The notes under the pieces were generated by a model, which saw nothing but the letters and a program-made list of their open reading frames with translations, ran no database searches and was not told where the DNA came from. A stretch of DNA of 64,000 bases from Haliotis rufescens (taxonomy: Eukaryota), in the NCBI RefSeq assembly GCF_023055435.1, contig NW_025963868.1:26164001-26228000 (forward strand), written 5' to 3'. This document shows, piece by piece, positions 3,169 to 63,363 of the stretch (the first letter of the stretch is position 1; each line of letters starts with the position of its first letter). Made by a program: the position numbers and the translations under genes.

Positions 3169-4611
3169 CACTTTAGATTCCATTTGCCACACAGGGCAAG
3201 ATTTTGACGAAGCAACATGTGGGCCAGAACAGTTTGCACATTTCAAATCATGATTACAGTCAGAGCTCTCATGGCTGTCACCACAGCGATGACATACCAC
3301 AGAGTTACGACAGGATTTGGAACCGTTACCGAAATGTTGGCACTTGTAGCAGCGGAGCGGATTGGGGATATACACATCCACTCCGATGTGGAAATAACCT
3401 GCTTTAATTGACTGTGGAAGGGATGTAAGGGCAAACGTTATGAGATAAGTATTAGTGTTTGTGATGACACCGTCTTTCTTCATTGTGAAACGTTTAACTT
3501 CAGTAACGGCCTGGTCTCCCAACTCTGTAACGATTTCTTCTTCAGACATGTCGGACAGACCACGAGCCCTGTCACGAACAATGCCTCGACAAGAATTTAA
3601 TGTTCTGTGCACAGACACAGCAACCTCAATATTGGCAAAGGTAGAGATAGATAAAAGATTGAGAGATTGCTGTCTCCGTGCACACTCCACCAGAAGCGAA
3701 CCACTACGGAGACGGGTGACGTTCTTGACCTCACCGCAAATCCCAGACACAGCCTTAGATAATGGCAAAAGGATTCAATTTGATGGGTAGTTTGTCAGAA
3801 GCCTCAATAACCAGGAATCGGGCCCAGGAATCAATATTTTGAGAAACATTTACAGTTGTAATTTCAATTTCCTCTAGACGTCTCTTTTTTATCATTTTGA
3901 GAAGAACCAGATTGTTGTTGAGCCATGATGAAAAGAATATAATTCAGCACCCCTGTTCCCCACCCGACATCGAGTGTCAACAAGGACAGTGTTATATTGC
4001 ACCGGATATCCAGGATGCAAACACCAGGGATACAGGGATGTTATACTCCAGCAAATATGACTTGAATAGCTATATTTATCTACCAGATGTAGTGCCAGGC
4101 AGGTTCAGTCCATGACAAGAAATTGGAGACATACAGAATACAGAGGTCAACATCACCAGATTGGCCCATGAGCCACCGCCTTCTGGCGTAAGACTCTAGG
4201 CAATTTATTCAATCAAAAATTGAGTATTCACACAAGTTATGCACGGCCAAGACCAAAATATACAGTAAAATACAACACAGGTGTGCATATGCAATATTAC
4301 GCAAAGGGCCTGGCATAACCAGCCGATTGATAAGACCGGGCCCATCTTACCACCCGTCTAGGCGAAGTAAGGGTCGAAGTAGTGTGTTGGGCAAAGGAAC
4401 ACAGTTCCAGGAACCAGGGCCCTCAACTACCAGACTCCCGTCCTCCGCCGACACAGGGACGCAACCCACGGCAAACGGGCTGCCCACTTTGGTCGCCTCT
4501 TACGACCAGCAATGGGGTGCTGTGGAAATATTCTGCCCCGGTTCCACACGGGGGAAGAGCTATCAGCGCTACGAAGCACTCACCACGAGGAGGTTGCTCT
4601 TCACGAGTGCC
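3169..4611 (-). mobile_element. I/Nimb-clade LINE 5' part (subfamily A): HDV-like ribozyme, ~685-nt 5'UTR, gag-like ORF1
   Basis: ORF1 from ATG 3926 (frameshift ~3760) with LRSGSLLVEC, YIPNPLRCYKCQHFG and three zinc knuckles (the first reads N in place of H). Confidence 0.85.
4554..4611 (-). ncRNA. HDV-like ribozyme, copy A (P1.1 GG mutated to UC, probably impaired)
   Basis: GGCACUC GU GAAGAGCA ACC UCCUCGU GGU GAGUGCU UC GUAGCG CUGA UA GCUCUUC. Confidence 0.7.
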
Positions 4612-15500: not shown

Positions 15501-16070
15501 ACTCGACAACCCTGCAGGGGTGTTATACTCCAGAAATAAAGACATGAATAGCTGTCGTTAATAAAAGGAAGAATGTCAGACTGGTTCGGCCCATGGCATT
15601 TTCCTATAAAAACACATAATTCAGCGGTCCGTATCACCAGATTGGCCCATGAGCCACCGCCTTCTGGCATAGGACTCTAGGCAAAATTTTATTTTACACA
15701 ATCAAGGTCATCATATATTTTGATCAAAACTGTAAGATAAGATACACCTGAATTATCAAGTATTCCATGCACAGGGCATGGCGTGACCAGCCGATTGATA
15801 GAATCGGGCCCATTCTACCACCCGTCTAGATGAAGTCAGGGTCAAAGTGGTGTGTTGGGCAAAAGGAACACTGTTCCTGGCTCCAGTGCCCTCGACCACC
15901 AGAATCCCTTCCTCCACCGACACAGGGGCGCAACCCACGGCAAACAGGTCGCCTTTTACGACCAGCAATGGGGTGCTGTGGAAACAGTCTGCCCCGGTTC
16001 CACACGGGGGAAGAGCTATTATTAGCGGTACCCAGCACTCACCACGAGGAGGTTGCTCTTCACGAGTGCC
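12585..16070 (-). mobile_element. I/Nimb-clade LINE (subfamily B), both ends intact, internally deleted
   Basis: 15-bp TSD TTCAGCGTAATGAGT (12570-12584/16071-16085). CCHC ORF1, APE (QWNCRG, CLQET, GDLNGH), RT (GVPQGSILS, FVDD), RNaseH (FTDGS, FTAEA, FTDSLS), (ACTC)n tail. Confidence 0.9.
16010..16070 (-). ncRNA. HDV-like ribozyme, copy B
   Basis: P1 GGCACUC/GAGUGCU (G1.U), P2 GAAGAGC/GCUCUUC, P3 ACC/GGU, L3 UCCUCGU, P1.1 CC/GG, J4/2 CUAA; G1 abuts the TSD. Confidence 0.85.
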
Positions 16071-25700: not shown

Positions 25701-27761
25701 AACAGCAAATGGAAATAAACAAAATACAATTCACAAACTTAGTTTTGTCGATGCCAACCTCAGAACCTTAAGAAACCTATGCTTCAATCACCAAGCGCCT
25801 TCTGAAACAACCACTAAAATTACAAATTTGCCAGTTGCCACAGCATCAGTAAACTGTCACACGGACTTATATAACATCATCCTTATATAACAGTTCTTTA
25901 TATGCACATACTGGTTCTCGAGGCGACTAACTGTAATATTGCTGATGCGGCGTAAAGCAATATTTATTCTTTCACACATCCTGAAAACTAATGAGGGGTA
26001 GTGAGTCACTTCTCTGAGTCAAGTGACACACCTGAGACAGTTTGGAATAAAGCTGCAATCGAAACACCTAACAGAGTGTGAAGCACGTATCATTACTGGG
26101 TGTGTTAAACAGGGGAATGTGTGATAAATGTAAAGTGTAACTACCGGCTCATGCCTGTACGTCAGGAGGCAACGCGAGTCTGTTAAGTTGATTAGTATTG
26201 TAGTGAGTGCGTGAGTGAGTGAGTATGGTTTTACGCAGCTTTTTGCAATATTCCAGCAATTTCACAGCGGGGGACACCAGAAATTGGCTTCACACATTGT
26301 ACCCATGTCGGGAATCGAACCAGGGTCTTTGGCGTGACGAGCGAACGCTTTAACCACTAGGCTACCCGACCGCCCCAATTAGTATTATAAGGGTAACGCT
26401 ATTTTACGGGGCATCATCATTTGCAGAAGCCTGAGGTCTTCAATTAACTGCCCGACGAAGACTGGCTTCTTCTGCAAATGATAATGCCCCGAAAAATGGA
26501 ATTTGTTATCAAATAAAAAGAAACAACAATATCGGTTTTAAAACATTTACTGCAATCAACACAAATGTCACTGACCCACTTTTACAAATATGGAAACGTC
26601 AGAGAACAAACCAGATGACGTCACTATTGAACGTGACGTCACCTATCCCCTATGACGTCACCTAAATGCTATTGCGTGCGTGCGTGCGTTCGTGCGTTCA
26701 TGCGTCAGATTAACATTGATACTCCACCCGGGTACGTTATACTCCAGGCCGACGAGTTCTTGACTAATCCCCCTAAACCCGGAAGGGTAACAAGTAATTA
26801 TAACATTTTTACATATATTTTGGTATACAGCTGTCAGGGAATTGAACTACTGACTATCCGCTGTTTAGGTAGATGTTCTATCAAATACACCACGGAGGTG
26901 GTTTAAAGTGTATAGCAAGTGACATGAGTAAGAAACTGTAGAATACCAGTCCATGTGACTTCCCACTTCAAATAGCCGAAAGTGGCTCAAGTGTTCGACC
27001 GTGGTAAACGGCACCTAACGTTTTACAAGTCTCCGGCAGGGCGTGACGGACACGAAAGATTAGACTAAAACTCTGTCCTATTCCTTTCAGACAAGCCTTT
27101 TCCAGTGAGACTCACTGATGCACGAGATACTAGCACCGGTATTTTCGACTGCCTTTTCAGAACCCCCAAAATATCTTTCTCTAAAAACTGTCCAATCTAG
27201 AAACAGCAAATGGAAATAAATACTCTCAGATAGCAGGTTGCTATTCAACCCTGATGGAACACTGAAAAATATGAAAGATACTTCTAGACGACGCGTGTGT
27301 TTATTTTTTTGGGTACAGATTTCAACTATTGACATGGCCACTTACAAATACACCCTTTATAGGTTTCAATGTAATGTACTACGAACAGAAACCATTCAGG
27401 CATAGGAAATTCATTTTGAGGAAACATTTTGGAAGTTATTCTCATGATGAGTGGTTCAAAGATAGGTATGTTGTCAAATGAGAAACATGAGACTAAACTT
27501 GTATCACTCATTTTTAAACTGCAATCATTTCCTGAAAGACCCTTTTTCATGCCATGCCAAGCATTTATCCAGCCTTGTTGACATCAAGTGTCTAATCGCT
27601 ACTAGCCCACATCGACAATACAATTTGCACCGATTCTCATGAACTCATGATACATACTGTCCCTCTGTGGATTACACAGACTGAAAATACTGGTCAGATT
27701 CTGTGATTTAATTTAAAGCGTGTCATCGTACATGGTACCCTTCTTGAACAAATCAAACATC

Positions 27762-28922: not shown

Positions 28923-31900
28923 GTTTGATACAATGTTCTTGATACTCAATAGTGATGTGGTTTACAACTACACTATGATGTGGTAACGCAGTATACCTTT
29001 CTTTTATAGAGGTAATGTGTGTAAATTGAAATAGTAGACATGTTCCATAACTGTATCAGAAAACTCTCAGCCCTTACCATGTATCTGTATTGACTTGTAC
29101 TGCACTGCACTCATTGGCCAAGAAATGTGCGAAAATCTGTTCCACGTTGCCACCCAGTGACACACGCTTCATCAGAGAACGTGTTTAAACACCTTTTTTT
29201 AATATTTAACTATTTCGCGCCTTGCGTCTTGAAGCAGTCAGTGAGTTGGGTTTAATGCCACTTTTAACAGTATTCCAGTTATATCAGGGCGTATCAGCTT
29301 AGTGTGGGAGGAAAGCCCAAAGTGATGCAGGTCTCAGACGTATACCACTTCGGTGAAACCCACGAGCATGGGTATGGTGCTGACAAATCTAATAACATGA
29401 TCGGGGCGAATCTGGCTTCGAACCAACAATCATAGGTTCCTGACGTACCCAAGGGTCGCAATTCTGCACAGCTAATCGCGGCGCCTTAGACGACTTGGCC
29501 ACCTGTGTCCCCCTTGAAGCAGTGACAAAATAAGTATTCATATATTTTACCACACCATAACTGAATATCTAATAAAGGTCGATCCCTTAACGTGACTTTA
29601 TTTACCCATAATTGTTTGAATTCAAAATATCTGAGGAAATATGACAATTATTACTCTTTTGGATACGCGAGGAAATATGACCTTATTAGACTTTGGGATA
29701 CCTGAGGAAATTTGATCTATATAGTAAGACTTTGGGATACCTTATAAAATGATATGGCCTGATGGTCTCCTCTCGTGTAGAGCATTACTAATCAACGAAA
29801 TTAAAGTCACTCATCTTGCATTGTGAAGTTTAGCCATGAGAAGACTTACTTTATTTTCCATTCAATCCCAACAATTGTTTCATCCAATTTCTGGTGTTTC
29901 TTTCAGATGTTTATTTCTCACTATTGTTAAAAGTTGTGACTTTATGGAACTGATAGAAAACACTTTCATTAGTACCATTCACACATGCTAACTGTTTCTA
30001 TAAGACGCCAGTCTGTCTGTTCGTCCGTCCGTCTATCCGTCTGTCTGTCCGTAATCATTTCCTTTACTGGGGCAGAAATCGAAAACTATTAAGTGTATCT
30101 GATAGAAACTTGGAAAATCTATCATGGGATTTTTCGAAAAAATTTTTTTTTTAATTTTAGGGACAGAAGTTGGACTTAGACTCCATTTGGGATGGGGTTC
30201 GTTTTCGGGGCAGAATTCGTAAGCCATTCAGCATATTTGATCGAAACTTGAAAGATGTATCAGTCATATGCTGAAGTGGTGCCTTTTGCTATTTTGTAAT
30301 ATTTAAAATATATATTTTTACAAATCTTTATGGAAAGAAGTTGGACAAGGACACGATTGCTAGTTTCACGGAAGCAGCCATGGTGCATCTTTTGTGGGAA
30401 AAACATGTATGCTTCTTGAAGAACATTCAACTCTTGACCCATATTTGCACATTTATTTCTGGTTACTTTACCGACAGCTGCCGGAAATATCATCTTTCTG
30501 ATGAATCTTCGTCACGCGTTAAAATGTGTGAATCAAAGTTGTGACACCTTAGAAAGCTCGCTGAATCAAGTGACACACCTGAGACAGTTTGGAATAAAGC
30601 TGCAATCGAAACACCTAAGAGAGTGTTTGAAGCACGTATCATTACTGTGTGTGTTAAACAGGGGAATGTGTGTTAAATGTAATGTGTAACTACCGGCTCA
30701 TGCCTGTACCTCAGGAGTCAAAGCGAGTCTGTTTAGTCAGGGAATTGAACTACTGACTATCCGCTGTCTTGGTAGATGTTCTATCAAATACACCACGGAG
30801 GCGGTTTAAAGTGTATAGCAAGTGACATGTGAAAGAAACTGTAGAATACCAGTCCATGTGACTTCCCACTTCAAAAAGCCGAAAGTGGCTCAAGGGTTCG
30901 ACCGTGGTAAACGGCACCTAACGTTTTACAAGTCTCCGGCAGGGCGTGACGGACATGAAAGATTAGACGAAAAACTCTGTCCTATTCCTTTCAGACAAGC
31001 CTTTTCCAGTGAGACTTACTGATGCACGAGATACTAGCACCGGTATTTTCGACTGCCTTTTCAGAACCCCCAAAATATCTTTCTCTAAAAACTGTCCAAT
31101 CTAGAAGCAGCAAATGGAAATAAACAAAATACAATTCAAAAACTTAGTTTTGTCGATGCCAACCTCAGAACCTAAAGAAACCTATGCTTCATTCACCAGA
31201 ACGCCTTCTGAAACAACCACTAAAATTACAAATTTGCCAGTTGCCACAGCATCAGTAAACTGTCACACGGACTTATATAACATGATCCTTATATAACAGT
31301 TCTTTATATGCACATACTGGTTCTCGAGGCGACTAACTGTAATATTGCTGATGCGGCGTAAAGCAATATTTATTCTTTCACACATCCTGAAAACTAATGA
31401 TGGAGTAGTGAGTCACTTCTCTGAGTCAAGTGACACACCTGAGACAGTTTGGAATAAAGCTGCAATGGAAACACCTAAGAGAGTGTGAAGCACGTATCAT
31501 TACTGGGTGTGTTAAACAGGGGAATGTGTGATCAATGTAATGTGTAAGTACAGGCTTCTTCTTGTACGTCAGGAGGCAACGCGAGTCTGTTAAGTTGATT
31601 AGTATTATAGTGAGTGAGTGAATGAGTATGGTTTGACGCCGCTTTTTGCAATATTCCAGCAATATCACAGCAGGGGACACCAGAAATGGGCTTCACACAT
31701 TGTACCCATGTCGGGAATCGAACCCGGGTCTTTGGCGTGACGAGCGAACGCTTTTACCACTAGGCTAACCGACTGCCCCAATTAGTATTATAAGGGTAAC
31801 GCTATTTTTCAGGGCATCATCATTTGCAGAAGCCCGAGGTCTTCCATTAACTGCCTGACGAAGACTGGCTTCTTCTGCAAATGATAATGCCCTGAAAAAT

Positions 31901-33245
31901 GGAATTTTATATCAAATAAAAAGAAACAACAATATCGGTTTTAAAACATTTACTGCAATCAACACAAATGTCACTGACCCAATTTTACAAATATGGAAAC
32001 GTCAGAGAAGAAACCAGATGACGGCACTATTGAACGTGACGTCACCTAAATGCTATTGCGTACGTGCGTGCGTTCGTGCGTACGTGCGTCAGATTAATAT
32101 TGATACCCCATCCGGGTACGTTACACTCCAGGCCGACAAGTTCTTGACTAATCCCCCTAAACCCGGAAGGGTAACAAGTAATTATAACATATTAACATAT
32201 ATTTTGGTATACAGCTGTCAGGGAATTGAACTACTGACTATCCGCTGTCTAGGTAGATGTTCTATCAAATACTACACGCAGGCGGTTTAAGGTGTATAAC
32301 AATGACATGTGTAAGAAACTGTAGAATACCAGTCCATGTGACTTCCCACTTCAAATAGCCGAAGATGGCTCAAGAGTTCGACCGTGGTAAACGGCACCTA
32401 ACGTTTTACAAGTCTCCGGCAGGGCGTGACGGACACGAAAGATTAGACTAAAACTCTGTCCTATTCCTTTCAGACAAGCCTTTTCCAGTGAGACTTACTG
32501 ATACACGAGATACTAGCACCGGTATTTTCGACTGCCTTTTCAGAACCCCCAAAATATCTTTCTCTAAAAACTGTCCAATCTAGAAACAGCAAATGGAAAT
32601 AAATACTCTCAGATAGCAGGTTGCTATTCAACCCTGATGGAACACTGAAAAATATGAAAGATACTACTAGACGACGTGTGTGTTTATTTTTGGGGGTACT
32701 GATTTCAACTATTGACCTTCAGGCATAGTAAATACATTTTGAGGAAACATTTTGGAAGTTATTCTCATGATGAGTGGTTCAAAGGTAGGTATGTTGTCAA
32801 ATAAGAAACATGAGATTAAACTAGTATCACTCATTTTTAAACTGCAATCATTTCCTGAAAGACCCTTTTTCATGCCATTCCAAGCAGTTATCTAGCCTTG
32901 TTGACTTCAAGTGTCTAAGTGCTACTAGCCCACATCGACCATACAATTTGCACCGATTCTCATGAACTCATGACACATACTGTCCCTCTGTGGATTACAC
33001 AGACTGAAAATACTGGTCAGATTCTGTGATTTGACTTATAGCGTGTCATCGTACATGGTACCCTACTTGAACAAATCAAACATCCTTTTAAAAAAACAAA
33101 TTCAGATTTAAATATTCAATGATTTATTGGTATTATGTAACTATGAGTATGACATATTGTTAAAAGACATGAACATATATTATGCATACAATTTCAGTTA
33201 ATGTGTTATTTTGGACACTGAACGTCCCTCAATAGAAATGCGACT

Positions 33246-33899: not shown

Positions 33900-35129
33900 G
33901 TTTGATACAATGTTCTTGATACTCAATAGTGATGTGGTTTACAACTACACTATGATGTGGTAACGCAGTATACCTTTCTTTTATAGAGGTAATGTGTGTA
34001 AATTGAAATAGTAGACATGTTCCATAACTGTATCAGAAAACTCTCAGCCCTTACCATGTATCTGTATTGACTTGTACTGCACTGCACTCATTGGCCAAGA
34101 AATGTGCTAACATCTGTTCCACGTTGCCACCCAGTGACACACGCTTCATCAGAGAACGTGTTTAAACACCTTTTTTTAATGTGTGATAAATGTAATGTGT
34201 AACTACCGGCTCCTTCTTGTACGTCAGGAGGCAACGCGAGTCTGTTTAGTCAGGGAATTGAACTAAAGACTATCTGCTGTCTGGGTAGATGTTCTATCAA
34301 ATATACCACAACGGTGGTTTAAAGTGTATATCAAGTGACATGTGTAAGAAACTGTAGAATACCAGTCCATGTGACTTCCCACTTCAAATAGCCGAAAGTT
34401 GCTCAAGGACTCGACCGTGGTAAACGGCACCTAACGTTTTACAAGTCTCCGGCAGGGCGTGACGGACACGAAACATTAGACTAAAACTCTGTCCTATTCC
34501 TTTCAGACAAGCCTTTTCCAGTGAGACTAACTGATGCACGAGATACTAGCACCGGTATTTTCGACTGCCTTTTCAGAACCCCATCGTATGGCAGGAGTAG
34601 TGCTGTGTGGCGTCAAACATCAAACACATACATTCCAATTAAAATGTTAGGACAATATACGTATCATTACTGGGTGTGTGAAACTGGGGAACGTGAGATA
34701 AATGTAATGTGTAACTACCAGTGTCCCGGTATAAACTCTCCCCCTACAAATTCTCCCCCCGGATATTTTATATCGGTACAGATGCTCCCCCGGGCGGATA
34801 TATTTCGCGTCCCCCCTCAGTATAAAGTCTCCCACCTGAGTATTCGGTTTGTTGCAGTGTCTTTAAGTACTATATTCTTTAAATAGTTATCTTTAATGTA
34901 AGGAGGGTTACTTTAAAAAATAGATTATGAAATATGGTCATGAAAAAATTTGAATGAAATGACTTAATGTAACATGTACGGTTACTGTTGTAACTGAATT
35001 CAGAAATGGCATTAATCCTCGCAAACATTCGGTTTTAACACTAACTACGTAAAAACTGTCAACGTATCCACGCGCGCCTCAAGCTCAGGCTGTCCGTTAT
35101 ACTCTGATTTAAGATCTAAAATATATTGC

Positions 35130-45300: not shown

Positions 45301-46763
45301 TGAACTGTTTTGAGGTTGTTCCTTTACCAATTATTTTGCATCAGAAAAGGAAATATTGTTTGTGTATTTGATCTTTATAATTTTGGTTTCTCTTTTAAAG
45401 ACTGGACACTGTTTGGAGGAGGACATGTGCTCACCGTTGCAGTCCGCACATCTGATGTCACCTGTGCAATCAGAGCTGTCATGATTCTTACTGCAACGGG
45501 AGCAGACTGCAGAGCCACGACAGGACTTGGCGCCATGGCCAAACTGTTGGCACTTAAAACATCGCAGTTGATGTGGTATATACACATCCACGCCGATGTT
45601 AAAATAACCAGCTTTGATTGAGGTTGGGAGCTTAGAAAGAGCAAATGTAAATAAATATGTGTGAGGGTTTACAACACTATCATGATCTTTTCTTGTAAAG
45701 CATTTAACAGCTGTTACACCTTGAGATTTTAGTTCCTGACAATCATGTCAGACAGGCATTTCGCTCGGTCGCGGACAATGCCCCTGCAGGAATTTAAAGA
45801 TTTATGAATAGATACTGTAATTGCGGTATTGGCAAAAATGATGAGCATTTAACAAATTAATTGTTGTCTCTTGGATCATTCTATCACGAGAGAACCAGAC
45901 CAGAGACGAGTGACGTTTTTAACGTCACCACAAATTCCTTGAACTGCCTTTGAAACTACAAAAGGGTTGATCTTGAGAGGCACACCATCAATGCCTTCTA
46001 CAACTAGAAATCTTGGCCACGAGTCAAGTTGGTTGGAGAAGATTCATCATCAGAAGATGAAATAGTATCTAAGTCAACATGTCTTGTGGGGTATCCATAA
46101 TGAGAGAAAGAAATTTCGTCAACCCTGCTCCCCACCCACCATGGAGTGTCAACAAGGACGGTTTTACAGTTGAAACTAGGCTGCAACACCAGGGCTACAG
46201 GGGTGTTATACTCCAGAAATAAAGACATAAATAGCTGTCGTTAATAAAAGGAAGAATGTCAGACTGGTTCGGCCCATGGCATTTTCCTATAAAAACACAG
46301 AATTCAGCGGTCCGTATCACCAGATTGGCCCATGAGCCACCGCCTTCTGGCATAGGACTCTAGCCAAAATTTTATTTTACAAAATCAAGGTCATCATATA
46401 TTTTGATCAAAACTGTAAGATAAGATACATCTAAATTATCAAGTTTTCCATGCACAGGGTATGGCGTGACCAGCCGATTGATAGAATCGGGCCCATTCTA
46501 ACACCCGTCTAGGTGAAGTCAGGGTCAAAGTGGTGTGTTGGGCAAAAGGAAGGCTGTTCCTGGCTCCAGTGCCCTCAACCACCAGAATCCCTTCCTCCAC
46601 CGACACAGGGGCGCAACCCACGGCAAACAGGTTGCCCAATTCGGTCGCCTTTTACGACCAGAAATGGGGTGCTGTGGAAACATTCTGCCCCGGTTCCACA
46701 CGGGGGAAGAGATATCAGCGCTACCCAGCACTCACCACGAGGAGGTTGCTCTTCACGAGTGCC
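42319..46763 (-). mobile_element. I/Nimb-clade LINE (subfamily B) duplicate; 3' end deleted, retains ORF1 and RT parts missing from 12585-16070
   Basis: YRPISLTS, GFRKNRST, FFDLEKACD, GVPQGSILS, FVDD; local duplication 42760-42915; same 5' flank TTCAGCGTAATGAGT. Confidence 0.9.
46706..46763 (-). ncRNA. HDV-like ribozyme, copy C
   Basis: GGCACUC GU GAAGAGCA ACC UCCUCGU GGU GAGUGCU GG GUAGCG CUGA UA UCUCUUC (one P2 mismatch). Confidence 0.85.
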
Positions 46764-59300: not shown

Positions 59301-59640
59301 ATAGTTTCCAAGCATTCATTGGCAAAGGCTATTTGTTTAAGATATGGACTCAGACACTGCACACATTCCACTTCTCATGTAGAATAAATAAAAGTGAAAA
59401 ACCCTTTCCATCTTAATAAGTAATATCTCTTGACAGAGTTCATAGTAAGATTCCGACCATAACTTTGCTGGTGAATCATAGTCATGATTTCAGGTGCAAG
59501 GGTACTCCGTGATCTACGTCAGAAACCTCATGAGTCTTTTAATGATGTTGCACATAAGATTCGCATAAATGTAAATTTTACAGGAAGATTATCCACCGTT
59601 CGCCCAAACATTTCTTGATAGGTTGACGTTAAAAATACTT

Positions 59641-62055
59641 CAAATTGGGCAACCCGTTTGTCGTGGGTTGGGTCCCTGTGTCGGTGGTGAACGGGATTCT
59701 GGTGGTTTTAAGCGCACTGGTTCCAGGAACAGTGTTCCTTTGCCCAATACACCACTTTGACCCTTACTTCGCCTAGACAGGTGGTAGGATAAGCACGATC
59801 CTCGGCTTGTCATTCAAAATTGTATTTGCACAAATTGTGTTTTCAAATTGTATATGTATATGTATTTGTTGTCCTTGAGGTTTGGTCATATTTACAACTA
59901 ATACTGTCTTAGTTGACTTTCAAATGTAAATATGTATTATGTATGTAATTTGCCTAGAGTTGTATGCCCAGAAGACGGTGGCTCATGGACCAATCAGGTA
60001 GCATATTTACTCTTAATTCTTCTGCTTGAGTATGTCTTCCATGTATACATTGTGCTGCATGTCGGACAGCCACCTGTTCGTAGCATTGGCTTTATGATAC
60101 TCCATGATGGGTGGGGAGCTCGGATGATGAAACACAATACACTCAACATGGATTATGAAACCCCCTAAAAAACAAAAAAAACCCGTCCATTTGATAATGA
60201 TGCTGACCAACATCCTTCAACATCTACTGAATATTGTCCACGATTCCTTGTGATTGAGACAACTGACAAGACTCCTCTCAAGCTGAACATCTTTGCAATA
60301 TCTAAGGGTGTGTCGGCATTCCAGTTGTAGTCACAGCTCACAGAACTCTCAACACCAGCAAAGGAATTATGAGAGACAGGGACCACTTGTTCGCAGACAT
60401 TACTGAAACTAAAATCGTATTTGAAATGAGAGACCAAGGTTTTTCTGTATGTAAAACAATTCACAACCCGTTATGGTCCAGACTCGATTATTTACAGACC
60501 GCCGTCATATAGCTTGAATATTGCTGAGTGCAGCGTTAAATAACAAACCAAACCAAACCAAACCACAACCCGATTTTTTTTTTACCGGAACCAACTAACA
60601 CATACCTCTTTTCCTTTTCGTCTCTAAATGCTTCAAAATCACTAAAGGTAGGTTACTGCAATATAAATGTTGAAATCTACATCCCCATTCCTTTAAGATG
60701 TTTGAAATGCCAAAAATACGGTCATGGCGTCAACACTGGCACGTTGTCTGTCACGTGTGCCCACTGTTGTAAGAAAACACATACAACCTACGATTGTGAC
60801 AGCACAAACTGTTTGGGGAATCATTCATCCTTCTTAAAAATATGTCCTATCTGGAAACAACAAATGAAAATCAATAAAATGATGAAAAAAACCCACACGT
60901 TCTAGCTCCGGAATTAAATGAAACTTATGCAAATGTCACCAGAACATCATCCGAAAGAACCCCCAAATTAATCACTTTGTCAATAAACTACCAGATAGAC
61001 TTGACGTGGGTGCACACAGAAACACCCCGGAGTTTACTCACAAGAAAAATCTACTCAAACTCCAGAATCCCTCTCTAACACACCAGTTCTCTGTCCAGTT
61101 CATACAAAGTCATCTTCTCTATCTCAGGAACAATAACCATCTCAGTCCGCTCAACAAACTCAATCTGCAACAAATGTGAAGCTGCAACAAATGTGAAGCT
61201 GTAAAACGCACAATCAAACCATGAACACATCCTTCAAAACAATGTAAAAGTGGAAGAGCCTCTAAGGGGTCAATTAACCAGATCCAACTATTTGGATCCC
61301 TTGAAGACATGGATGTGACTGAAGCATCCATCCTAGGCCACACAGCTTGCTGCCCACCAAGTACGGGATAGATCCCCCATGCATCCACCAAAGAGATAGT
61401 TTATTCCCATAATATCATACAGTGGAATAGTAGATGACTGAGGACTAACGACTAACGTCAATGAATTACATCTGTCAGTCCAGGAATTTAAAGCATCAGC
61501 ATTCTGCCTACAGGAAATGTATCTAAAATAGACCGATCATCTAATTTACGTCAGTATCAGGCATATCATTTTTTTTCTCCTCCTGGGGATAGGGTCATTG
61601 GATGATCTTCAATTATTGTTAAGCAAGATGTTATTCATAGCCCTGTTATACATGTACTTAACACCAATCTCCAAGCCGAGGGGATGGTCGGGTAGCCTAA
61701 TGGTTAAAGCGTTCGCTAGACACGCCGAAAACCCGGGCTCGATTCCCGACATGGATACAATGTGTGAAGCCCATTTCAGGTGTCCCCCGCTGTGATATTG
61801 CTGGAATATTGGTAANNNNNNNNNNNNNNNNNNNNNNNNNNNNNNNNNNNNNNNNNNNNNNNNNNNNNNNNNNNNNNNNNNNNNNNNNNNNNNNNNNNNN
61901 NNNNNNNNNNNNNNNNNNNNNNNNNNNNNNNNNNNNNNNNNNNNNNNNNNNNNNNNGCGACAACCCTGGTTCAAGCATTAACAATAAAGATAAAATAACT
62001 GAGGATTCAATCTCCAATAATGACCTGTGCACATTTAATGATGATTCCAATCCCT
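59641..62055 (+). mobile_element. Degraded I/Nimb LINE (5'UTR, ORF1, APE start), lacking the ribozyme head
   Basis: UTR blocks homologous to 4330-4490; PRFLVIE, YIPIPLRCLKCQKYGHG, IIQWNSR, FCLQE remnants. Contains a SINE tail insert 60471-60560. Confidence 0.7.
61816..61956. other. Assembly gap (N run)
   Basis: Ns; begins inside a SINE. Confidence 1.
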
Positions 62056-62250: not shown

Positions 62251-62602
62251 ATTTAAATATTTCTTATTTACGTGAGTGCACATCATTATTGCTGTCATAT
62301 AATGAATCTTATACGTATTTTTAATTGCTTATGAACTCTTTAAGTGGGGAACAACGTCTTTCAGCACAAACGGTTAATTTATCATAGAGTCTGCCTGTCT
62401 GTCTGTCAATCTGTCTGTCCGTCTGATATCAAACCGCCGAGATTTCCGCAATAATGTAATATTTTAACTGAAAAGTTTACTTTCTTTTAACCACACAAAT
62501 ACGATGCAGATTACGTTGGGACACGTCGGTTTAGAATGTTGTAAAGCTGATTGTGTAAGATGATACTAAACAATACAGAAATTGCAGATCCCTCACATTT
62601 CC

Positions 62603-62875
62603 GACCCGTGAAGATTCCGGGGTAGAATAGGTCTTCAGCAACCCATGCTTGCCGTAAAAGGCGACTATGCAGGTCGTAAAAGGCGACTAACGGGATCGGG
62701 TGGTCAGGCTCGCTGACTTGGTTGATGCATGTCATCGATCCCAATTGCGTGGATCGATGCTCATGACATTAATCACTGGATTGTCTGGTCCAGACTCGAT
62801 TATTTACAAACCGCCGTCATATAGCTGGAATATTGCTGAGTGCGGCGTTAAACAACAAACCAACCAACCAACCAA
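62603..62875 (+). mobile_element. Short non-autonomous retroposon with a structured non-tRNA head and Nimb-type 3' tail
   Basis: 13-bp TSD CCCTCACATTTCC (62590-62602/62876-62888); (AACC)n tail; no Pol III A/B boxes seen. Confidence 0.85.
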
Positions 62876-63031
62876 CCCTCACATTTCCAGATCAGAATTA
62901 CACATCGTAACACATGGTTTAAACAGTATTAAATGAAATGAGTCAATGGGATGACTGAAGCAACATGATTTTGATCAGAAGACAATACTTAAACTTCAAG
63001 ACACCTGCGGTCAGACTTCAAAATACCTGAA

Positions 63032-63206
63032 GGGGCACGAGTGGCCAAGTCGTCTAAGGTGCCGTGATTCGCTGTGCAGAGTTGCGTCCCTTGGGCACGC
63101 CAGAAACCTATGATTGCGGGTTCGAAGCCCGGTTCGCCCCGATTATGTCTCTTGGTTTGTCAGCACCATACCCGTTCTCGTGGGTTTCACCGACGTTGTA
63201 AACGTC
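63032..63206 (+). mobile_element. tRNA-derived SINE family 1, cut by gap
   Basis: Reverse complement of the 20703-20978 head. Confidence 0.85.
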
Positions 63207-63363
63207 NNNNNNNNNNNNNNNNNNNNNNNNNNNNNNNNNNNNNNNNNNNNNNNNNNNNNNNNNNNNNNNNNNNNNNNNNNNNNNNNNNNNNNNNNNNNNN
63301 NNNNNNNNNNNNNNNNNNNNNNNNNNNNNNNNNNNNNNNNNNNNNNNNNNNNNNNNNNNNNNN
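63207..63363. other. Assembly gap (N run)
   Basis: Ns; begins inside a SINE. Confidence 1.

What the first reader, a model, noticed from the sequence alone, without database searches (positions are those of the whole stretch)
62603..62875. Second structured RNA motif shared by LINE 5' ends and the head of a non-tRNA retroposon
Seen: directly after the HDV ribozyme the LINEs read CCCCG-UGUGGAA-CCGGGGCAGAAUAU-UUCCACA-GC-ACCCCAUU-GC-U-GGUCG-UAAGAGG-CGACC-AAAGUGGG (4483-4553; also 15947-16009, 46635-46705). The TSD-bounded element here starts GA-CCCG-UGAAGAU-UCCGGGGUAGAAUAG-GUCUUCA-GC-AACCCAU-GC...GUCG-UAAAAGG-CGAC-UAA-CGGG. The 7-bp stem differs at 3 positions and all still pair (two compensatory, one U.G). 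Loop GGG(G/U) is complementary to loop (A/C)CCC, a potential kissing pseudoknot. AGAAUA and UAA(G/A)AGG are conserved, and CCC/GGG closes a 4-way junction. The last hairpin is tandemly duplicated in this copy. The element begins 2 nt before the motif and shows no Pol III boxes and no HDV domain. Inference: the motif may be enough to supply a retroposon 5' end, acting as an unclassified self-cleaving/processing RNA, 5'-end protector, internal promoter or RT-recruiting module. I cannot match it to hammerhead, HDV, twister, pistol or hatchet folds.
Basis: partly seen in the sequence, partly recalled or inferred. Interest (0 to 1): 0.85.

Follow-up and report, generated by a model that had tools for sequence, protein, structure and literature searches.

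The report
LINE-derived folded head of abalone SINE
A very abundant abalone SINE begins not with a tRNA but with a roughly 70-nt folded RNA module copied from the 5' UTR of a LINE, where it sits just behind an HDV-like ribozyme. This kind of LINE-derived SINE head was already reported in molluscs in 2016, and how it works is still open.

Summary
Window 62603-62878 is a TSD-flanked SINE. All 30 best genome copies start at the same G, and a 32-nt core occurs 15,071 times exactly. The genome is a Haliotis (abalone).

SINE nt 3-63 are homologous to nt 60-120 of an APE/RT/RNase-H LINE. There the block follows a 58-nt HDV-like ribozyme whose cleavage site is the LINE's 5' end.

The 7-bp hairpin is supported by compensatory changes at three pairs, and a second LINE lineage adds a third state at one of them. 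The kissing loop and closing stem show no covariation.

No tRNA or known ribozyme fold is detectable. Self-cleavage at the motif's 5' edge is disfavoured:
- LINE-type motifs are never found without the HDV domain upstream.
- Active SINE subfamilies tolerate duplication or triplication of the last hairpin.

It almost certainly belongs to the "LP-SINE" class (Matetovici 2016: a ~70-bp LINE-5'UTR head, reported in Haliotis). I could not compare sequences directly.

The likeliest mechanism is a dual 5' module: an internal promoter in the SINE and a folded cis-RNA in the LINE. That is inferred, not shown. The new points are the HDV adjacency and the covariation. Interest is moderate.

The parts
62590..62602 (+). 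5' target-site duplication CCCTCACATTTCC
   Evidence: The identical 13-mer recurs at 62866-62878. TSDs are seen in most genome copies.
62603..62697 (+). SINE head: LINE-5'UTR-derived module, in the version with a duplicated last hairpin. G1A2 + CCCG (62605-62608); stem P1 5' 62609-62615; loop 62616-62630; P1 3' 62631-62637; AGCA/UGCU mini-stem around ACCCA, 62637-62649; hairpin copies 62651-62665 and 62673-62687; CGGG 62691-62694; UC 62696-62697.
   Evidence: The single-hairpin ancestral form is 69 nt.
62698..62785 (+). SINE body of unknown origin, with an internal inverted repeat CATCGATCC/GGATCGATG
   Evidence: No similarity to the head-donor LINE and no Rfam match.
62786..62865 (+). SINE 3' tail region and (AACC)n repeat, shared with the 3' end of another element at window 60470-60570
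   Evidence: 95% identity over 78 nt. It differs from the 3' end of the head-donor LINE.
62866..62878 (+). 3' target-site duplication
4554..4611 (-). HDV-like ribozyme forming the exact 5' end of LINE copy A. P1 GGCACUC/GAGUGCU with a G.U first pair; P2 GAAGAGC/GCUCUUC; P3 ACC/GGU; L3 UCCUCGU.
   Evidence: Weak Rfam match. All 30 genome copies lose similarity exactly 5' of this G.
4483..4553 (-). The same module in LINE copy A, directly 3' of the ribozyme. P1 4542-4548 / 4521-4527; hairpin GGUCG-UAAGAGG-CGACC 4491-4507.
15947..16009 (-). Module in LINE copy B, with a deletion after the hairpin
46635..46705 (-). Module in LINE copy C
   Evidence: This LINE runs from 46760 down to about 40985.
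60470..60570 (+). 3' end of an old LINE-related element (5'UTR pieces, an ORF1-like piece, then this tail) that carries the SINE-type tail. It is a candidate relative of the tail-donor LINE lineage.

Best explanation
What it is (high confidence, about 0.9). This is the head of a very abundant abalone SINE. The head is a ~69-nt module taken from the 5' UTR of an I/Nimb/Ingi-like LINE (APE endonuclease, RT, weak RNase H signal, CCHC ORF1). In that LINE the module lies immediately 3' of a 58-nt HDV-like ribozyme. It is most probably (about 0.7) the 'LP' (LINE-promoter) head that Matetovici et al. 2016 reported in Haliotis and other molluscs.

How it works (inferred, about 0.45). It is a dual-use 5' module.
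- As DNA in the SINE it acts as an internal promoter that starts transcription 2 nt upstream of the motif. This gives every daughter copy the same first G without any flanking promoter.
- As RNA it folds: a covarying 7-bp hairpin with a conserved 14-15-nt loop, an AGCA/UGCU mini-stem presenting CCC, and a conserved hairpin with loop UAARAGG. In the LINE this fold serves a cis function in the RNP, such as binding of LINE protein, stability or translation. It cannot be defining the LINE's 5' end, because the ribozyme does that.

Shown: homology, fixed 5' end, copy number, covariation in P1, constant HDV adjacency in the LINE, and absence of tRNA or known-ribozyme signatures. Inferred: promoter activity, the polymerase involved, and any protein binding.
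For: - Fixed 5' end with TSDs in 30 of 30 best copies and 35 of 44 copies with a clear TSD. The 32-nt core has 15,071 exact copies. About 26 untargeted copies fall in 349 kb. An element this prolific, with subfamilies of different age, needs a portable way to make its 5' end.
- The SINE-LINE homology is limited to the ~60-70-nt module.
- P1 covariation: 3 pairs changed on both sides and none on one side only. A second LINE lineage has UGUGGAC/GUCCACA. Genome-wide exact counts for that pair are A/U 761, C/G 13, A/G 3 and C/U 2.
- In the LINE the module is never separated from the ribozyme, so there it is internal RNA rather than an end.
- The first ~300 nt of the 5' UTR are 98-100% identical among LINE lineages whose ORF1 region is 55-85% identical.
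- The genome is a Haliotis.
- Literature: LP-SINEs with a ~70-bp LINE-5'UTR head occur in Haliotis, Littorina, oysters and scallops. In Saccostrea an LP head replaces a tRNA head on the same body and tail, so it supplies what a Pol III head supplies (PMC4758252).
Against: - No promoter assay or RNA data.
- No recognisable A/B boxes. The element itself carries no Inr, and a DPE-like GGTCT near +28 is only a 5/6 match seen by eye.
- If the module set a start site 2 nt upstream of itself in the LINE too, LINE RNAs would lack the ribozyme. All LINE copies have it, so any promoter role is not what conserves the module in the LINE.
- Identity with the published LP head rests on size, host genus and origin, not on a sequence alignment. 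The figures and Repbase entries were not available.
- The covariation rests on only three lineages in one genome.
Confidence: 0.5

Rival explanations
1. RNA-only module with a processed 5' end. The SINE has no promoter of its own and is read through from host transcription. Its exact 5' end is made by a cellular enzyme that recognises the fold. One option is RNase P-like cleavage in front of a tRNA-sized cloverleaf. Another is a 5'-3' exonuclease stalling at the structure (xrRNA-like).
For: - In single-hairpin SINE copies the MFE fold is a 72-nt cloverleaf. Its 7-bp closing stem (with one bulge) starts at the element's first nucleotide, G1-C72 (z = -2.5 for one copy).
- The LINE version has a shorter closing stem and is not cut there. 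LINE RNA would in any case be protected by the 5'-OH that HDV cleavage leaves, which is established HDV chemistry.
- No promoter motifs were found.
Against: - ARAGORN finds nothing at default or 80% thresholds, and the Rfam tRNA model has no match at E <= 10.
- The closing stem and loop contacts show no covariation.
- A tRNA-like fold should also attract RNase Z, which would sever the head from the body.
- Duplicating or triplicating the last hairpin inside the closing stem is tolerated by active subfamilies.
- The young duplicated form does not fold into the cloverleaf as MFE.
Confidence: 0.15
2. The motif is a new self-cleaving ribozyme that cuts at its own 5' edge, as HDV-like, hatchet or twister T-variant ribozymes do at LINE 5' ends.
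For: - Exact 5' end with no promoter signature.
- Pseudoknot-capable C-rich and G-rich segments.
- Precedents for ribozymes at LINE 5' ends: HDV-like, and twister T-variants in Perere-3 where the TSD abuts the cleavage site (PMC8501958).
- A loose resemblance of CCCAUGC and GUAAAAGG to twister L4/L2 strings, seen by eye only.
Against: - No Rfam ribozyme family matches at E <= 10.
- In the LINE the same motif sits behind a working-looking HDV ribozyme, and the HDV part is always retained: 25 of 26 in a sample taken without regard to upstream sequence, and 0 exceptions in exact-pattern searches. If the motif cut at its 5' edge, LINE progeny would lose the HDV domain.
- Hairpin duplication or triplication and a 1-nt loop insertion are tolerated in active subfamilies.
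- The highly conserved large loop does not fit the twister layout, where that loop is variable.
Confidence: 0.05
3. The head is a very diverged tRNA-derived (or other small-RNA-derived) Pol III head, and the LINE 5' UTR picked up the same piece.
For: - tRNA-like size and cloverleaf MFE.
- GGUAGA in the big loop recalls tRNA positions 18-23.
- The last hairpin has T-arm geometry (5 bp, 7-nt loop) in the LINE.
- The SINE has no internal TTTT run, although about 40% of sequences of this size and composition would lack one by chance.
Against: - No tRNA, 5S, 7SL or snRNA match in Rfam at E <= 10.
- ARAGORN is negative. At 60% thresholds it returns mutually inconsistent calls, including the HDV region.
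- A-box and B-box consensus positions are not matched when read by eye.
Confidence: 0.08
4. The module has no function in the SINE. It is a hitch-hiking LINE fragment acquired by template switching, and a few master copies happen to lie behind host promoters.
For: LINE RTs do create chimeras by template switching, as discussed in PMC4758252 and PMC5786205. The body and tail come from other sources.
Against: - The 5' end is identical across old and young subfamilies and in at least 15,000 copies. That would need every successive master to start at the same base.
- The SINE and LINE versions differ by compensatory changes that keep P1 paired.
- The same kind of head recurs independently in SINEs of several mollusc lineages (PMC4758252).
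Confidence: 0.07

Closest known systems
LP-SINEs (LINE-promoter SINEs), Matetovici et al. 2016, Genome Biol Evol, PMC4758252
   Same: TSD-flanked short retroposons with tandem-repeat tails. Their first ~70 bp are homologous to the 5' part of LINE 5' UTRs (Nimb-17_LMi, I-3_DR, RTE-9_CPB) instead of a small RNA. They were reported in Haliotis diversicolor and H. midae, Littorina, oysters and scallops. The head size matches (69 nt here), the host genus matches, and so does the LINE type (RNase-H-bearing I/Nimb-like).
   Different: I could not align the sequences, because the figures, supplements and Repbase entries were not available. In the published LINEs the block is described as the first 68 bp. 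Here it lies behind a 58-nt HDV-like ribozyme. The paper proposes a promoter and reports no RNA structure or covariation.
Pr77 / L1TcRz hallmark of trypanosomatid L1Tc, ingi and the non-autonomous NARTc/RIME (PMC3383444, PMC3185411, PMC4748587; abstracts seen)
   Same: A ~77-nt 5' block shared by LINEs and their short non-autonomous partners. It is both an internal promoter as DNA and a folded, functional RNA.
   Different: Pr77 itself is the HDV-like ribozyme. Here the shared block is a different fold lying 3' of the ribozyme, and the SINE lacks the ribozyme. No sequence similarity was tested.
Conserved RTE 5'-UTR domain and 'bipartite non-autonomous LINEs', Kojima 2018, PMC5786205
   Same: A conserved domain inside LINE 5' UTRs, not at the 5' end. 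It is shared across LINE clades, including a mollusc Ingi element, and reused in SINEs. The paper argues that a 5' ribozyme is left out when LINE 5' parts enter SINEs.
   Different: There the domain ends up in SINE bodies behind a tRNA head. Here it is the head itself. Sequence identity with this motif is untested.
R2 SIDEs (Eickbush and Eickbush 2012, PMC3414825)
   Same: Short non-autonomous elements built from LINE 5' and 3' parts.
   Different: SIDEs keep the 5' ribozyme and both ends of one LINE. This SINE lacks the ribozyme, and its tail comes from a different LINE lineage than its head.
Twister T-variant ribozymes at Perere-3 5' ends (PMC8501958)
   Same: A structured RNA at the very 5' end of a retroposon, with the TSD abutting it.
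   Different: No Rfam twister match. The conserved-loop layout differs. In the LINE the motif's edge is not an RNA end.

Membership tests
LP-SINE (LINE-5'UTR-headed SINE) | Short TSD-flanked retroposon ending in a short tandem repeat | tested here: met
   13-bp TSD and (AACC)n tail. TSDs are present in most genome copies.
LP-SINE (LINE-5'UTR-headed SINE) | The first ~70 nt are homologous to the 5' part of a LINE 5' UTR, and homology is restricted to that block | tested here: met
   SINE nt 3-63 match LINE nt 60-120 at 76-77% identity, and nothing else matches. The single-hairpin head is 69 nt.
LP-SINE (LINE-5'UTR-headed SINE) | The head aligns with the published LP heads (Lsa_2, Hdi_LP/Hmi_LP) and with the first 68 bp of Nimb-17_LMi, I-3_DR and RTE-9_CPB | not testable with these tools
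   No sequences are given in the paper's text and no supplements are held.
LP-SINE (LINE-5'UTR-headed SINE) | No tRNA, 5S, 7SL or snRNA-derived head | tested here: met
   Rfam search at E <= 10 and ARAGORN were both negative.
LP-SINE (LINE-5'UTR-headed SINE) | The head works as a promoter | not testable with these tools
   The authors proposed this but did not show it. No RNA data could be obtained.
HDV-like ribozyme (for the motif itself) | Nested double pseudoknot P1-P2-P3-P1.1-P4 with a C-rich L3 and a catalytic C in J4/2 | tested here: not met
   No HDV-family match in the SINE at E <= 10. There is no P3/L3 equivalent when read by eye. The separate block upstream in the LINE does fit.
Other small self-cleaving ribozymes (hammerhead, twister, twister-sister, pistol, hatchet, hairpin, hovlinc) | Match to the family covariance model | tested here: not met
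   No match at E <= 10 over 62560-62900.
tRNA-derived SINE | tRNA-like head with A and B boxes | tested here: not met
Bipartite non-autonomous LINE / SIDE | Carries the true 5' end and the 3' end of one parent LINE | tested here: not met
   It lacks the LINE's 5'-terminal ribozyme. Its 3' tail differs from the head-donor LINE's 3' end.

The most novel reading that the evidence does not exclude
The ~70-nt module is a previously uncharacterised RNA fold, tRNA-sized and built as a cloverleaf or pseudoknot. By itself it creates and protects a defined RNA 5' end, through RNase P-like processing, exonuclease stalling or weak self-cleavage. Retroposons across animal phyla use it as an alternative to a Pol III head.
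Probability: 0.12. Interest if true: 0.85.

Novelty: new member of a known kind. Interest (0 to 1): 0.45.

Why it matters
Nearly all SINEs take their promoter from a small RNA gene. LP-type heads are the known exception, and their function has never been tested.

This abalone genome gives a clean natural experiment. The same module is internal in the LINE, behind an HDV-like ribozyme, and terminal in a SINE with at least 15,000 near-identical copies. Compensatory changes point to selection on an RNA hairpin.

That argues the module is more than a DNA promoter. It also gives concrete constructs for asking what defines the 5' end of a non-Pol-III SINE: promoter, processing or protection.

Tried and rejected
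Searches of the motif itself:
- Rfam, all families: at gathering threshold on the whole window, and at E <= 10 on the SINE and on the LINE 5' end. Nothing hit the motif; there was only a weak HDV hit upstream in the LINE.
- ARAGORN at default and relaxed thresholds. Nothing at 80% or above; at 60% it gave inconsistent noise.
- Threading the motif onto HDV and twister layouts by eye did not fit.

More lineages within the genome:
- The R-at-stem-position variants turned out to be scattered mutated copies, not subfamilies.
- L070 is a one-off copy.
- No LINE lineage carries the SINE-type stem.
- No LINE-type motif lacks the HDV domain.
- The HDV 3' end is never followed by anything other than the motif.

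Cross-species evidence:
- One metagenome pattern scan gave a single hit, at the chance level I estimated, with no stem.
- ORF1 homologues were found in four other Haliotis species and in Gigantopelta.

Later evidence therefore comes from 80-character pattern print-outs read by eye.

Other negative results:
- Cap-derived extra G at the 5' junction. Only 9 of 44 copies have extra bases, 5 ending in G and 4 in A, which is not informative.
- Full-text search for the motif strings found no paper that prints them.

Full report
**What is there**

Window 62603-62865 is a ~265-bp retroposon. It is flanked by a 13-bp target-site duplication (62590-62602 and 62866-62878) and ends in (AACC)n.

A search of the window's own genome (1.33 Gb) returned 40 scored copies at 97-100% identity out of 1,673 candidates. 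In all 30 fetched loci the similarity stops at the same G of GACCCGTGAAG, with unrelated sequence upstream and TSDs in most. So this copy is not a 5' truncation of something longer.

Across 44 copies with a clear TSD, the TSD abuts that G in 35. The other 9 carry 1-3 extra bases.

A 32-nt core of the head occurs 15,071 times exactly. About 26 copies that I had not targeted lie in 349 kb of fetched DNA. That suggests several tens of thousands of copies.

**The LINE**

The three cited places (4483-4553, 15947-16009, 46635-46705) are the minus-strand 5' UTRs of a ~5.8-kb LINE. It has:
- an ORF1 with a CCHC knuckle starting near nt 685;
- an APE endonuclease and an RT;
- a weak RNase H signal behind the RT.

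This is an I/Nimb/Ingi-type architecture.

ORF1 is 92% identical to a Haliotis cracherodii protein. It has many relatives in H. asinina, H. rufescens and H. rubra, so the genome is an abalone.

The LINE's first 58 nt fit a minimal HDV-like ribozyme: P1 with a G.U first pair, then P2, P3 and an L3 reading UCCUCGU. The Rfam match is weak (20.7 bits, E 0.11). However, all 30 genome copies lose similarity exactly 5' of the predicted cleavage-site G. That is what self-cleavage of a read-through transcript predicts. The motif follows the ribozyme's last helix strand without a gap.

**The shared motif**

SINE nt 3-63 align with LINE nt 60-120 at 76-77% identity, and nothing else in the SINE resembles this LINE.

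Older SINE copies have a single terminal hairpin, which makes the head 69 nt. The young subfamily, including the window copy, has that hairpin duplicated, and one copy has three.

Conserved pieces in both LINE and SINE:
- CCCG;
- a 7-bp stem (P1);
- the loop CCGGGG-Y-AGAAUA;
- AGCA/UGCU around (A/C)CCCA;
- the hairpin GUCG-UAARAGG-CGAC;
- a GGG run.

**Structure evidence**

P1 is UGUGGAA/UUCCACA in the LINE and UGAAGAU/GUCUUCA in the SINE. Three pairs differ on both sides and stay paired, and no pair differs on one side only. Assuming about 30% divergence, I estimate that pattern at roughly 4e-5 by chance. This is a rough estimate of my own.

A second LINE lineage has UGUGGAC/GUCCACA. Genome-wide exact counts for that pair are:

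| Pair | Count |
|---|---|
| A/U | 761 |
| C/G | 13 |
| A/G | 3 (one 35-kb cluster) |
| C/U | 2 |

. The pair therefore takes three states: A-U, C-G and U.G.

The other elements never vary or vary only by wobble:
- The terminal hairpin and the AGCA/UGCU stem are invariant.
- The proposed GGGG/CCCC loop contact needs a register shift between LINE and SINE.
- The closing CCCG/CGGG stem shows at most one-sided wobble changes, and the alignment there is ambiguous.

An alternative pairing of the 5' CCCG with the loop CGGG (an H-type pseudoknot) is equally possible, and RNAalifold prefers it.

Single-hairpin SINE heads fold as MFE into a 72-nt cloverleaf whose 7-bp closing stem (with one bulge) starts at nucleotide 1 (z = -2.5 and -1.0). 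The LINE version and the duplicated young head do not.

In short, one hairpin is well supported. The rest is conserved sequence with plausible but unproven pairings, based on three lineages in one genome.

**What it is not**

- No tRNA: ARAGORN finds nothing, including at 80% thresholds, and at 60% returns only inconsistent noise.
- No Rfam family of any kind matches at E <= 10 over the SINE.
- The motif has no HDV-like P3/L3.
- A loose likeness to twister strings does not survive the layout comparison. I noticed it while reading PMC8501958.

**Does the motif cut or mark an RNA end?**

In the LINE it does not.
- In a pattern sample anchored inside the motif, taken without regard to upstream sequence, 25 of 26 LINE-type motifs have the ribozyme's 3' end directly upstream.
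- No exact LINE-type motif anywhere in the genome lacks it.
- The ribozyme's 3' end is never followed by anything else.

If the motif cleaved, or stalled an exonuclease, at its own 5' edge in LINE RNA, LINE copies beginning at the motif should pile up. None is seen.

Together with the tolerated hairpin duplication or triplication and a 1-nt loop insertion in active SINE subfamilies, this speaks against a compact ribozyme.

It does not exclude processing that is specific to the SINE version, whose closing stem is 2 bp longer.

**Origin of the parts**

The head-donor LINE ends in a different 3' sequence than the SINE.

The SINE's last ~80-95 nt match the 3' end of an old element at window 59640-60570. 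That element also holds pieces of the LINE 5' UTR and an ORF1-like stretch. The tail therefore comes from a related but different LINE lineage.

No LINE lineage carries the SINE-type stem.

**Comparison with what is known**

Matetovici et al. 2016 (PMC4758252) described LP-SINEs. These are TSD-flanked SINEs whose first ~70 bp are homologous to the first 68 bp of LINE 5' UTRs (Nimb-17_LMi, I-3_DR, RTE-9_CPB). They found them in Littorina, Haliotis diversicolor and H. midae, oysters and scallops. In Saccostrea an LP head replaces a tRNA head on the same body and tail. They proposed, without testing, that the block is a promoter.

The size (69 nt), the host genus, the LINE type and the abundance needed for the element to show up in their sparse data all fit. 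I put 0.7 on identity, but I could not align sequences.

Kojima 2018 (PMC5786205) described a conserved domain inside RTE 5' UTRs, and in a mollusc Ingi LINE, that is reused in SINE bodies. He argued that 5' ribozymes are left out of such chimeras.

The trypanosomatid Pr77/L1TcRz block is the closest functional analogue. It is shared by LINE and non-autonomous partner, acts as a promoter as DNA and is folded as RNA.

**Mechanism**

The Saccostrea head swap and the SINE's fixed 5' end across subfamilies favour an internal promoter in the SINE.

The covariation, the internal position behind a ribozyme, and the near-identity of the first ~300 nt among LINE lineages that are 55-85% identical in ORF1 require an RNA-level role in the LINE.

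I therefore favour a dual-use module (0.45-0.5). The rivals are:
- processing by a host enzyme (0.15);
- a cryptic small-RNA head (0.08);
- a functionless passenger (0.07);
- self-cleavage (0.05).

None of the functional steps is shown.

**Limits**

No cross-species DNA could be obtained.
- The second LINE lineage is documented only by pattern print-outs.

**Verdict**

The element is a new member of a known kind. The HDV adjacency and the stem covariation add to what has been published. Interest is 0.45.

Noticed in passing
LINE 5' UTRs: loci L032-L060 compared with window 4611-3100 (minus strand): The first ~300 nt of the 5' UTR are 98-100% identical among LINE lineages whose ORF1 region is only 55-85% identical. 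The loci were chosen by similarity over the first 216 nt, which biases that part. The identity nevertheless extends further and reappears at nt 400-450. This points to 5'-UTR exchange or strong constraint.
   Followed up: partly
G000:C1:867228/867276; C1:5869461/5869511; C13:33609311-33609547; C179:3936365-3936506: Tandem arrays with a period of about 48-50 nt, built from the SINE head (stem, loop and the CCC segment). This looks like a head-derived satellite.
   Followed up: no
window 59640-60570 (+): An old composite element: LINE 5'-UTR pieces, an ORF1-like stretch (PLKLNIFAISKG) and then the SINE-type 3' tail. It is a candidate relative of the SINE's tail-donor LINE, or a bipartite non-autonomous LINE.
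   Followed up: partly
window 63024-63140 (+), next to the N gap that starts at 63207: A tRNA-like SINE head containing GGTTCGAAGCCCGG, a B-box-like string. ARAGORN and Rfam at gathering threshold do not call it.
   Followed up: no
window 31711-31767 (-): A partial tRNA match (Rfam 30.2 bits, model positions 8-63), probably another tRNA-derived SINE head.
   Followed up: no
window 26556-26961, 30735-30864, 31959-32344, 34248-34377: Repeated copies of the last 130-380 nt of the head-donor LINE. They are either 5'-truncated LINEs or a SINE family that uses that LINE's tail.
   Followed up: no
L070:1487-1565 (G000:C1:26691421): A single SINE copy whose head is LINE-like in the loop and CCC segment and has a U-A at stem pair 4. 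It is unique in the genome, so it is a chimera or a mutated copy rather than a lineage.
   Followed up: yes
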